From positions 26,164,001 to 26,228,000 of the forward strand of contig NC_079167.1 of the NCBI RefSeq assembly GCF_947568905.1: a stretch of 64,000 nucleotides of DNA, written 5' to 3'. Source of the DNA: Ostrea edulis (lineage: Eukaryota). Numbering within the stretch: position 1 is the first letter of the stretch; each line of letters starts with the position of its first letter. Positions 18,601 through 24,501 of the stretch are shown in pieces. The notes below the pieces were generated by a model. It made no database searches. It had not been told where the DNA came from and saw only the letters and a program-made list of their open reading frames with translations. Both the position numbers and the translations under genes were made by a program.

Positions 18601-21600
18601 AGGGGAAATACTCACTGAATGGGAGTTAAAAATTTAAATTGTGAGTGAAAAGCTACAACCAGTCACAATTTTTTTTCCGCATGAATGGCCATTGTTGGAT
18701 ATTCATAGTGTTTCACGGACACATCCTGTTGCCACTTATCTTTCATATAATGAAGGGAAGACAAATGTACTGTATGTTTTAAGTTCACTGAATCAGTTTA
18801 ATACTAGAAGTTTTCTTAGATGGTGGAAGTTTTTATGTTAGATCTGTTTGTAGGTGTGGAACTTGACTAACTGCAAACTAAAGACCAACCACATCGGACA
18901 CACCGGTTACCTGAACTGTGTCACAGTGTCCCCTGATGGCTCTCTGTGTGCCTCTGGTGGCAAGGTAAGTTTTAAACGAAGGAGAATTTTACCTGTTAAC
19001 CACCTTCAGTCAGCATGTTGATTTATAAAATTGTATTTTTAGAAAAACAATAACATTGATATATTGCTTATGTGCAGCAACCACAAGGTGAATAAAAACC
19101 ACTGTTTTAATGCTTAACAGGATGGACAAGCCATGTTGTGGGATCTGAACGAAGGCAAGCACTTGTACACATTGGATGGAGGCGATGTCATCAATTCACT
19201 GTGCTTCAGCCCCAACAGATACTGGCTGTGTGCTGCCACAGGACCTAGCATCAAAATTTGGGTATGTTGAAAACTTGTACACGGTTTACATCTCGAGACA
19301 ATTGCCTCCTATTTGCTTAGAAATTTTGATAGAGAATAACTGGCTTACTGTGCTTTAAGTAATTTATTTACATCATATAGGTTTTTTTTATAGCTCACCG
19401 AAACAATGATCACAGTGTTGGCTTCGGCATGACACTTTAAAGAAAAAAACTTGTACCATTTTATCTATCTTTTGAATCAAGGGGGTAGAGCTTTGATATT
19501 TCACATATAAGTTCCTCTTGATCATACCTTTCATTTGGTACCAAGACTTTTGACGTTATGACCTTTTTTTTAAAACCTGTAACCTTGGCTATATTTATTA
19601 AATCAAGGGGGATGGGGTAAGTAGAGTTGTGCTTTCCCCTGAGCTACAATGTCTTCTGTTAAGACAGAAATTCAATCACCTTTATGTTAGAATTTATTTA
19701 CCATACTATGGCACTGATGATTACAAAAATGACATGATTGATGCATAGTGAAAGAAATGTCCTCCAATTCTGATGGTGCCAGAGTTTTAGAGAACAAGTT
19801 ATTTCAGCATACAGTGTATTTTGTTCAAAGGTGTAAATACCATTATTTTACATGTATTTCTCGTAGCATTTTCCTCACTGTAAAAGTTGTGACTTTTTAA
19901 ATACGATTCATATTGTTATTACATGTACTTCTTTCTAATTCATTTGATAAATAAAATACACTTCAAATGTTTACTTCCCTTTTGTGACCTACCTTTCTGA
20001 TAGATTTGATGTAGGTGATAAGGTAGATAAGATAAACATTGCGTTTTTGGTAAAATGTCAACAGTAATATTTGTTGAGCTATTAATAACTTTTTCCAAGT
20101 GTTCAGTGCTTCCCAAGGCAGTGTTCGAAATTGGTTTAAAACTTGTTATAGACCATGGGTCTATGCCAAAACAAGATGCTTAGACCTCATCGAATTGGAA
20201 TAGACCGTAACATTGGGGGAAAAACACCACAAATTTTAAACATTTTCATTTACTTCTAATATACTTAGAAAGCATATTTTCTTTCCATTTCTATAATATC
20301 CTCCTTTCCTCATAATGTTTATCAGATGTCGACTGACCATGCAAGGTCCTTTGGGATAACTTTATTGCTTTAAATCTAGAAAATTGGCATAGACAATTTG
20401 GTCTATCTCAATTACAGTTGGCATAGACCCGTACCATTTGACATAGACTTGGTCTATCGGTCCATGGTTAATTTCGAACACTGCCCAAGGTCATCTGGTA
20501 CTTACAGGACATTTGGTAAAGTAAAGGTTGAGATATTACTGGACCAAGTCAAATTTTACCAGACCGAAATTCTATGGGCAAATTAAAACACTTTGTTTAA
20601 TTGTCAACTATAGCGCTCACTCTAAAGTATGAATATCCACAGCGCTCACTCTAAAGTATGAATATCCACAGCGCTCACTCTAAAGTTTGAATATCCACAG
20701 CGCTCACTCTAAAGTATGGATATCCATAGCGCTCACTCTAAAGGTTGGATATCCACAGCGCTCACTCTAAAGGTTGGATATCCACAGCGCTCACTCTAAA
20801 GTTTGTATATCCACAGCGCTCACTCTAAAGTTTGGATATCCACAGCGCTCACTCTAAAGTTTGGATATCCACAGCGCTCACTCTAAAGTATGAATATCCA
20901 CAGCGCTCACTCTAAAGTATGGATATCCACAGCGCTCACTCTAAAGTTTGTATATCCACAGCGCTCACTCTAAAGTATGGATATCCACAGCGCTCACTCT
21001 AAAGTATGGATATCCACAGCGCTCACTCTAAAGTTTGGATATCTACAGCGCTCACTCTAAAGGTTGGATATCCACAGCGCTCACTCTAAAGTTTGGATAT
21101 CCACAGCGCTCACTCCAAAGTTTGGATATCCACAGCGCTCACTCTAAAGTTTGAATAAGTGTTGATGCTTTTGATTTTACTTCCATCCTTTTACTGGAAT
21201 TATTTTCTTGAAACTGATACAGTAATTAACAAATTTAGATGAGAACAACTTCCATGCATGGAGTCCTATTGTTTGAAATGAGAAATAAAACTGAGAATAT
21301 CAGTCCAATGATTACCACACGAACATGTATTAGCTATTGAGTTCTAATGAAAAGAACACGAGAAAATGAGGACGGTATTCTCATTATGTATGAAATCAAT
21401 CCCTGTAAAATTAAGACTAGCGTTTTAAAAAAAAATACTGGGTTTGTATGTAAGAATTTTAAACTTGAATATGACAAGGTACCCAATATCAGATTTTTGA
21501 TATGTTTGAATTATGAAATACAAATATTGATCACAGACTTATGCTAGCACCATTTTCAATAGCTTTTGGTAACCCTGCCTACCTATAAATGAAATTTATT

Positions 21601-24501: not shown

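What the first reader, a model, noticed from the sequence alone, without database searches (positions are those of the whole stretch)
19262..24324. Six SNORD96-like snoRNAs in one RACK1 intron: candidate sno-lncRNA or polycistronic snoRNA unit
Seen: the 5063-nt intron 6 holds six copies of one C/D snoRNA (starts 19709, 21830, 22026, 23356, 23544, 24167), and RACK1 joins to a full 317 aa without any exon between them. Known: animal intronic snoRNAs usually occur one per intron and are freed by exonuclease trimming of the lariat, while introns with two snoRNAs can give sno-lncRNAs capped by snoRNPs; RACK1 also hosts SNORD96A in vertebrates. Inference: trimming would stop at copies A and F, leaving a 4.5-kb RNA that contains internal snoRNP sites, a MITE and a minisatellite. 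Otherwise an endonuclease or cryptic noncoding exons must separate the copies. Only F sits at the usual distance (80 nt) from the 3' splice site, so it is probably the ancestral copy.
Basis: partly seen in the sequence, partly recalled or inferred. Interest (0 to 1): 0.82.

Follow-up and report, generated by a model that had tools for sequence, protein, structure and literature searches.

The report
Amplified SNORD96-type snoRNA cluster in RACK1
The last intron of this mollusc's RACK1 gene carries six tandemly amplified copies, four intact and two decayed, of the small RNA that guides methylation of 5.8S rRNA; this is a real but fairly ordinary intronic snoRNA cluster, and no long stable intron RNA has been shown.

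Summary
Intron 6 of RACK1 (19262-24324) contains six related box C/D units on the sense strand, and nowhere else in the window. The gene joins to 317 aa with no exon between them.

Only four units look functional. A, C, E and F have a CUGA D box and a 7-11 bp terminal stem. C, E and F also carry the SNORD96 guide (CUGCAAUU next to box D, aimed at 5.8S Gm75). A has one G>C change in the guide. B and D are decayed: CUUA D box, broken stem, lost guide.

B-C and D-E belong to a 1.5 kb tandem duplication. Short-read contigs from two samples support it, so it is not an assembly artefact.

Related RACK1 loci from metagenomes carry the same snoRNA as a single copy, but in other introns and 260-870 nt from the 3' splice site. 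The amplification is therefore lineage-specific, and copy F has no special claim to be ancestral.

Intronic snoRNA gene clusters are already known from rice and Drosophila. The sequence prerequisites for a sno-lncRNA are met. However, RNA-like contigs show intron signal at only about 1e-4 of exon depth, plus a single cryptic splice junction. The sno-lncRNA idea stays untested.

The scan also holds an unchecked note of a three-copy H/ACA cluster in another intron of this genome.

The parts
19121..19261 (+). RACK1 coding exon 6 (residues 213-259)
19262..24324 (+). RACK1 intron 6, GT-AG, phase 0, 5063 nt; hosts the cluster
24325..24501 (+). RACK1 coding exon 7 (residues 260-317 plus stop)
19709..19781 (+). 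Copy A (type I). Boxes AUGAUUA and CUGA, 7-bp stem. The guide has one G>C change (GUCCUCCAAUU).
   Evidence: CM 74.0 bits
21828..21899 (+). Copy B (type II), decayed: D box CUUA, broken terminal stem, guide lost
   Evidence: CM 30.4 bits, nhmmer 11.5 bits
22026..22097 (+). Copy C (type I), intact: 13-nt guide GUGUCCUGCAAUU directly before CUGA, 7-8 bp stem
23354..23423 (+). Copy D (type II), decayed duplicate of B
23544..23615 (+). Copy E (type I), identical to C
24170..24241 (+). Copy F (type II), intact: 12-nt guide, 10-11 bp stem (24167-24244), 83 nt before the 3' splice site
21253..22154 (+). Repeat unit 1 of the tandem duplication (holds G1, B and C)
22744..23664 (+). Repeat unit 2 (holds G2, D and E). 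About 3.6% substitutions plus indels against unit 1. Both private junctions are seen in short-read contigs.
21296..21384 (+). G1: a further C/D-like element with weak boxes (AAUGAUU, UUGA, AUGA) and a 14-bp outer stem. Status uncertain.
22787..22875 (+). G2: the paralogue of G1 in unit 2. A truncated third copy lies near 23660-23710.
20117..20485 (.). MITE-like repeat with 16-nt perfect inverted ends; high copy number in DNA runs
20612..21157 (.). Minisatellite, 29 nt x 18.8 copies, 95% matches
23131..23140 (+). Cryptic donor-like site CAAG|GUCAAA in unit 2. The paralogous unit-1 site at 21628-21637 reads CAAG|AUCAAA. One RNA-like contig joins this position to exon 7.

Best explanation
This is a lineage-specific intronic snoRNA gene cluster. 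A single-guide box C/D snoRNA of the SNORD96 type directs 2'-O-methylation of 5.8S rRNA at the residue called Gm75 in human. It is an old resident of RACK1, and here it has been copied several times inside the last intron.

Two subtypes exist: type I (A, C, E) and type II (F, B, D). An older duplication set a type II copy next to a type I copy. A recent 1.5 kb tandem duplication then doubled that pair. C, E and F keep boxes, stem and guide. A keeps boxes and stem but has a changed guide. B and D are pseudogenes.

Inferred mechanism: each intact copy binds the core snoRNP proteins on the RACK1 pre-mRNA or on the excised intron, helped by its own terminal stem. Each is then released as a 72-nt snoRNP by exonucleases that enter from the intron ends and from internal breaks. 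Extra copies raise the snoRNA yield per host transcript.

Shown here: the sequences, the gene model, the duplication in DNA, and the relatives in other animals. Inferred: expression of each copy, the processing route, and the methylation itself.
For: Anatomy. All six share the box AUGAUUA at the same distance from the stem. A, C, E and F have CUGA and 7-11 bp stems. The guide-target duplex is 13 nt for C/E and 12 nt for F.

Same guide as SNORD96. The Rfam consensus ends in uCUGcAAUUCUGA. Human U96A primers show the same 3' end, and its host is RACK1 (PMC3941584). SNORD96A/B are assigned to 5.8S Gm75 (PMC11550049).

Relatives. Seven distinct RACK1 contigs from metagenomes hold a single sense-strand snoRNA with the same guide and D box but different, still complementary, stems. 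Six of the 8 stem pairs change on both sides, a count reached by 6 of 500 shuffles.

Guide and target co-vary. L029 has CUGCAGUU, which fits the hexapod 5.8S sequence GAACUGCAGG.

Constraint. Units 1 and 2 differ at 32 substitutions in about 900 nt, but at none in 21983-22115, which contains C/E. No difference was listed within the C/E-type snoRNA in the contig of a second organism, while its flanks differ at 14 listed positions.

The duplication is real. Short-read contigs match both the C-to-spacer and E-to-F junctions and the spacer-to-unit-2 junction with 0 mismatches, at the same depth as unique flanks.

Precedent. Intronic snoRNA gene clusters occur in rice and Drosophila.
Against: No small-RNA data were available, so no copy is shown to be expressed. 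The Rfam SNORD96 model is below threshold. The C box departs from RUGAUGA at position 6 in all copies. The 5.8S sequence of this species was not at hand; the target segment comes from general knowledge and a spider primer. How internal copies of an animal intronic cluster are freed is not established, so the processing step is the weakest link.
Confidence: 0.65

Rival explanations
1. After splicing and debranching, trimming stops at the outermost assembled snoRNPs. One or more stable, non-polyadenylated sno-lncRNAs then accumulate (A..F about 4.5 kb, or A..C, C..E, E..F), carrying the MITE and the minisatellite.
For: The published prerequisites are met: two or more snoRNA genes in one intron, an intact 5' snoRNA C box and an intact 3' snoRNA D box. 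The host is very highly expressed (exon depth about 2e5 in the RNA-like runs).
Against: In the two RNA-like runs the intron pieces have depth 5-30, about 1e-4 of the exons. Depth is no higher inside A..F than upstream of A (15.8 at 19281-19461), and it is 0 over copy A. These are contigs of unknown library type, so a poly(A)-minus RNA could simply be missing. Mammalian sno-lncRNAs are species-specific even where the snoRNAs are conserved.
Confidence: 0.15
2. Only F, or only one or two copies, yields mature snoRNA. The upstream copies are silent duplicates on their way to decay, like B and D.
For: F alone lies 83 nt from the 3' splice site and has the longest stem. B and D show that copies here do decay. 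A has a guide mismatch next to the target position.
Against: C and E are identical within units that are 3.6% diverged, and no difference was listed within the C/E-type snoRNA in a second organism's contig. Single-copy relatives in other animals sit 260-870 nt from the 3' splice site, so distance is not limiting for this family.
Confidence: 0.15
3. Cryptic non-coding exons or nested splicing divide the intron, so that each copy is released from its own sub-intron.
For: One 384-nt contig in run X1 (depth 14.5, similar to the other intron pieces) joins about 21631 to the exon 7 acceptor. The paralogous unit-2 site reads CAAG|GUCAAA.
Against: There is one junction in one run, with 30 nt on its short side. 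No acceptor inside the intron was seen. That junction would remove B-F or D-F together and would not separate them. The flanks of the copies share no duplicated acceptor region.
Confidence: 0.05
4. The extra copies are an assembly expansion, for example two haplotypes laid in tandem.
For: The units are about 95% alike, similar to haplotype divergence in such genomes.
Against: Contigs from short reads of two samples cross the spacer-to-unit-2 junction (22575-22821), the C-to-spacer junction (22092-22516) and the E-to-F side (23610-24500) with 0 mismatches. Each unit has the same contig depth as the unique flanks, not half. The samples may include the assembled individual.
Confidence: 0.03

Closest known systems
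Human SNORD96A (U96A) in RACK1
   Same: Box C/D snoRNA with the same guide (..UCCUGCAAUU directly before CUGA, assigned to 5.8S Gm75). Same host gene, sense strand.
   Different: Human has one copy, in intron 2, which has a GC donor. Here there are four intact and two decayed copies in the last intron (residues 259/260). In this gene the GC-donor intron is intron 3, and it holds no copy. The internal sequence differs enough that the Rfam model scores 22 bits against a threshold of 43.
Intronic snoRNA gene clusters of rice and Drosophila melanogaster
   Same: Several snoRNA genes lie within one intron of a host gene, without exons between them (PMC2780460, citing Huang et al. 2004 and 2005).
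   Different: Here all members are paralogues of one guide in a mollusc, with recent tandem duplication and visible pseudogenisation. I could not read the primary Drosophila papers, so details of their copy structure were not compared.
Mammalian sno-lncRNAs (Prader-Willi region; mouse Rpl13a SNORD33-SNORD34)
   Same: An intron with two or more C/D snoRNA genes, in a ribosome-related host, meets the stated prerequisite.
   Different: No RNA with snoRNA ends is shown here. The span would be 4.5 kb with further snoRNP sites inside.
Single-copy RACK1-hosted relatives in metagenome contigs (L014, L016, L017, L023, L025, L029, L032)
   Same: Same guide and D box, a conserved internal UGAU motif, a terminal stem, the RACK1 sense strand.
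   Different: One copy each, in the intron at residues 212/213 or 143/144. They have a canonical GUGAUGA C box. The source organisms are unknown.

Membership tests
SNORD96 (Rfam RF00055) | Covariance-model score at or above the gathering score (43 bits) | tested here: not met
   C/E 22.1 bits, F 17.6 bits, no gathering hit. The metagenome relatives score 27.8-30.8 bits.
SNORD96 (Rfam RF00055) | Guide directly upstream of box D that pairs with 5.8S rRNA so that the fifth position meets G75 | tested here: met
   C/E pair over 13 nt and F over 12 nt with AAUUGCAGGACAC. The motif is identical to the Rfam consensus 3' end and to human U96A. A has one mismatch. B and D have lost the guide. The 5.8S segment comes from general knowledge and a spider primer, not from this genome.
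SNORD96 (Rfam RF00055) | Box C/D architecture with terminal stem | tested here: met
   A, C, E and F have AUGAUUA, CUGA and 7-11 bp stems. Stems co-vary across relatives. The C box departs from the consensus at position 6.
SNORD96 (Rfam RF00055) | Hosted in RACK1 (true of SNORD96A) | tested here: met
   Same gene, different intron.
SNORD96 (Rfam RF00055) | 5.8S is actually methylated at the target in this species | not testable with these tools
   Needs RiboMeth-seq or primer extension.
Intronic snoRNA gene cluster | Two or more snoRNA genes in one intron, on the host's sense strand | tested here: met
Intronic snoRNA gene cluster | No exon between the members | tested here: inconclusive
   The coding sequence needs none. 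One cryptic junction contig exists. No long-read RNA was available.
Intronic snoRNA gene cluster | Members mature as separate snoRNAs | not testable with these tools
   No small-RNA run was available, and contigs cannot show RNA ends.
sno-lncRNA | Two snoRNA genes in one intron, with an intact C box at the 5' end and an intact D box at the 3' end | tested here: met
   A and F, and also C and E.
sno-lncRNA | Stable non-polyadenylated RNA whose ends are the two snoRNAs | tested here: inconclusive
   Intron contigs reach about 1e-4 of exon depth with no enrichment inside A..F. The library type is unknown and only contigs were available.

The most novel reading that the evidence does not exclude
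The cluster does more than raise dosage. First, snoRNP-capped long RNAs (A..F or sub-spans) may accumulate from this very highly expressed host, carrying a 19-unit minisatellite. Second, copy A may have been retargeted by its single G>C guide change from 5.8S (AAUUGCAGGAC) to 18S ((A)UUGGAGGGCA, the NS31 primer region; 11 pairs including one G-U). The same G>C change occurs independently in the single-copy relatives L016 and L017.
Probability: 0.15. Interest if true: 0.6.

Novelty: new member of a known kind. Interest (0 to 1): 0.35.

Why it matters
The finding shows that the RACK1-SNORD96 host-guest pairing reaches from vertebrates to a mollusc and other invertebrates, while the intron that holds the snoRNA changes between lineages. 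It also captures snoRNA gene birth and death (tandem duplication, conservation, decay) within one 5 kb intron. It offers a natural test case for how animals free internal members of an intronic cluster, and for whether sno-lncRNAs exist outside mammals. None of this overturns current views. The value is as a clean, testable example.

Tried and rejected
- Rfam at gathering thresholds found only two tRNAs in the window.
- Relaxed Rfam scans of RACK1 introns 1-5 gave nothing credible. There is no SNORD95-like element.
- My own C/D scan of 12000-25000 found only A, C, E and F, a chance hit inside exon 2, and a weak candidate at 16008-16117 that I reject for poor boxes.
- A metagenome scan for an oyster-type snoRNA DNA pattern found nothing.
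- I used a spurious intronic ORF as bait in the protein word search, hoping to fish out genomic contigs of relatives. It found nothing.
- The covariance model kept the window's copies one column out of register, because they have an extra U after box D. The pair counts therefore mix two registers and understate pairing.
- Alignments of the flanks show homology for only about 25 nt upstream and a few nt downstream within each subtype, and no co-duplicated exon 7 acceptor.
- MAFFT gave no convincing homology between the G elements and the L041 snoRNA.
- Weak microRNA-family hits at 22504-22580 come from a (TA)16 palindrome and are spurious.

Full report
**Observation**

Seven coding exons join to a 317-aa ORF: 12638-12746, 13164-13335, 14929-15076 (GC donor), 18298-18393, 18854-18964, 19121-19261 and 24325-24501. 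The translations of exons 6 and 7 match residues 213-259 and 260-316 of RACK1 chains in ribosome structures, at E about 1e-32. Intron 6 is therefore 19262-24324, phase 0, GT-AG.

Six related units align with one another. The 3' motif occurs four times with up to 1 mismatch, against 0 expected. The 5' motif occurs six times. All hits are on the + strand inside the intron, and the rest of the window has only two chance-level 3-mismatch hits to the 5' motif.

**Anatomy of the copies**

There are two subtypes. Type I is A, C and E. Type II is F, B and D.

- All six share the box AUGAUUA in one register, three nucleotides after the terminal stem. This keeps the R-U-G-A-U core of box C and departs from RUGAUGA only at position 6.
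- A, C, E and F have a CUGA D box. Their terminal stems are 7-8 bp (A, C, E) or 10-11 bp (F).
- B and D have CUUA, which loses the G of the sheared G-A pair. Their stems are broken and their guide region is changed.
- Against a profile and a covariance model built from the intact copies and their relatives, B and D score 11.5/9.9 and 30.4/27.9 bits. The intact copies score 49-56 and 67-74 bits.
- There is no room for a 5' guide, so these are single-guide snoRNAs.

**What the guide points at**

Directly before box D, C and E read GUGUCCUGCAAUU and F reads UGUCCUGCAAUU. This is the complement of AAUUGCAGGACAC in 5.8S rRNA. The fifth position before box D pairs with the G that is Gm75 in human.

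- The 5.8S segment is general knowledge. A published spider 5.8S primer (TGTGAATTGCAGGACACATYG) contains it. The 5.8S of this species was not available.
- The Rfam SNORD96 consensus ends in uCUGcAAUUCUGA.
- The primers used to clone human U96A show the same 3' end, and human U96A lies in RACK1.
- SNORD96A and SNORD96B are the guides listed for 5.8S Gm75.
- By function and host this is a SNORD96-type snoRNA. By the Rfam score it is not a member: 22.1 and 17.6 bits against 43.

**How the copies arose**

Unit 21253-22154 and unit 22744-23664 form a tandem duplication with a 1.5 kb period. They differ by 32 substitutions in about 900 nt, plus many indels. There is no difference at all in 21983-22115, which contains C/E. 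Across B/D there is only a 2-nt indel.

Flank homology within each subtype extends only about 25 nt, so the older duplications are much older. Each unit also holds a further C/D-like element, described under side observations below.

**Is the duplication real?**

I laid the contigs of four public runs on 19100-24500. Runs X3 and X4 (organism B, DNA-like) give contigs identical to the window across three informative junctions: C to spacer (22092-22516), spacer to unit 2 (22575-22821), and the E side to exon 7 (23610-24500). They also match unit-specific stretches.

In X4 each unit has about the same contig depth (about 57-137) as the unique flanks (76-92), not half. The tool warns that contig depth is no copy number, so I treat this as supportive only. 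A haplotype laid in tandem would not produce the spacer-to-unit-2 junction. The samples may include the assembled individual.

**RNA evidence**

Runs X1 and X2 (organism A) are labelled only as guessed RNA. Exon depth is about 2e5 against 5-30 in the intron, which makes RNA or cDNA the sensible reading; this is my inference.

- Intron contigs cover C (21884-22296), D plus E (23352-23696), and F running unspliced into exon 7 (23706-24352).
- Depth upstream of A (15.8 in X1) is no lower than inside A..F. Copy A itself is uncovered.
- In the D/E contig no difference was listed within the C/E-type snoRNA, while 14 differences and 4 indels are listed in its flanks. Three differences, presumably near the contig ends, are not listed.
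- One contig (384 nt, depth 14.5) joins about 21631 to the exon 7 acceptor. The window reads CAAG|AU there, but the paralogous unit-2 site reads CAAG|GUCAAA.
- This points to a low-level cryptic donor. It would remove several copies together and would not separate them.
- Contigs cannot show small RNAs or RNA ends, and the library type is unknown. Neither the mature snoRNAs nor a sno-lncRNA is tested by these data.

**Relatives elsewhere**

A metagenome scan with the exon 7 peptide returned 80 loci. About half are cDNA-like. The genomic ones widely share the intron at residues 259/260.

- The same snoRNA, as one sense-strand copy, lies inside RACK1 in L014 (=L015), L023, L025 (=L026), L032, L016 and L017 (=L018). 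In these it sits in the intron at residues 212/213, 260-870 nt before the next exon.
- In L029 it sits in the intron at 143/144, 88 nt before the exon.
- Their stems (GAUGACU/AGUCAUC; CAAGCAU/AUGCUUG in L029) differ from the window's UGGCAUC/GGUGCCA but remain complementary. Six of 8 pairs change on both sides, a count reached by 6 of 500 shuffles. The window's copies are one column out of register in that alignment.
- L029 has the guide CUGCAGUU, which fits the hexapod 5.8S sequence GAACUGCAGG. This is a change on both the guide and the target side.
- L001 has the closest RACK1 (88-94% identity, 34.5% G+C). Its last intron is 344 nt and holds no such snoRNA, although the contig lacks the first third of the gene.
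- In human, U96A is in intron 2.

The host-guest pairing is therefore old. The intron varies between lineages, and the amplification is specific to this lineage. The 70-80 nt distance rule does not hold for this family in invertebrates.

**Most likely mechanism, and its rivals**

I read this as an intronic snoRNA gene cluster, a known organisation in rice and Drosophila. It yields separate 72-nt snoRNPs from C, E and F, and probably A. B and D are dead copies. This explains the conservation of C/E and the stems. The release of internal copies is inferred, not shown.

The sno-lncRNA reading meets its published sequence prerequisites but has no support in the data at hand. I give it about 0.15. 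"Only F is active" is weakened by the conservation of C/E and by the distant placement of the relatives. Cryptic exons rest on one contig. An assembly artefact is largely excluded.

**An unexplained detail**

Copy A's guide differs by one G>C (GUCCUCCAAUU). The same change is present in the single-copy relatives L016 and L017. With that change the guide pairs with (A)UUGGAGGGCA of 18S rRNA, the region of the universal NS31 primer, over 11 positions including one G-U. With 5.8S it has a mismatch next to the target. This could be a target switch or a tolerated mismatch. I could not test it.

**Side observations**

- G elements at 21296-21384 and 22787-22875, with a truncated third near 23660-23710, have a 14-bp outer stem and weak boxes. 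They give a sub-threshold SNORD66 hit (20.7 bits against 32). They also carry 12 nt complementary to AGCUAAUACAUG of 18S, a segment present in a widely used 18S primer.
- In L041 and L030 the last RACK1 intron holds other C/D snoRNAs. The L041 one is SNORD45/33-like at 28 bits.

**Verdict**

The kind is known, so this is a new member. The long-RNA interpretation is unproven.

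Noticed in passing
window 21296-21384, 22787-22875, about 23660-23710: Each repeat unit holds a further C/D-like element ('G') with a 14-bp outer stem and weak boxes (AAUGAUU, UUGA, AUGA). It gives a sub-threshold SNORD66 hit (20.7 bits, threshold 32) and has 12 nt complementary to 18S AGCUAAUACAUG. 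The third copy is truncated. It could be a decaying or unusual snoRNA.
   Followed up: partly
window 19760-19773; L016 1330-1351; L017 965-985: The same single G>C change in the guide (CCUCCAAUU instead of CCUGCAAUU) occurs in copy A and in single-copy relatives from other animals. It would favour pairing with 18S UUGGAGGGCA over 5.8S.
   Followed up: partly
window about 21631 and 23135, joined to 24325: One RNA-like contig (run X1, depth 14.5) joins an intronic site to the exon 7 acceptor. The unit-2 paralogue reads CAAG|GUCAAA, a possible cryptic donor.
   Followed up: partly
L029 1187-1248: A RACK1-hosted relative in the intron at residues 143/144 has the guide CUGCAGUU. This matches the hexapod-type 5.8S (GAACUGCAGG), so guide and target changed together.
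   Followed up: partly
L041 1882-1958; L030 600-658: In other animals the last RACK1 intron (residues 259/260) hosts different C/D snoRNAs. The L041 one is SNORD45/SNORD33-like at 28 bits and has a D' guide to 18S UAAUACAUGC.
   Followed up: partly
window 14929-15076 / 15077: RACK1 intron 3 (after residue 143) has a GC donor (CAG|GCAAGU). Human RACK1 intron 2, the host of U96A, is also reported to have a GC donor. Whether they are the same intron was not determined.
   Followed up: no
window 2863-2935 (-), 32529-32599 (+): Two tRNA genes by Rfam (51.1 and 31.6 bits).
   Followed up: no
window 22512-22579: A (TA)16 microsatellite inside a 34-nt imperfect palindrome draws spurious microRNA-family hits. 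Organism A's contigs skip 22512-22703.
   Followed up: no
window 2173-2372, 56214-56364: Two runs of N (200 and 151 nt). Left as they are.
   Followed up: no
window 20117-20485: The MITE-like element has contig depth of thousands in DNA runs and many different flanks at 20119 and 20483. It is also present in RNA-like contigs at depth 100-300.
   Followed up: partly
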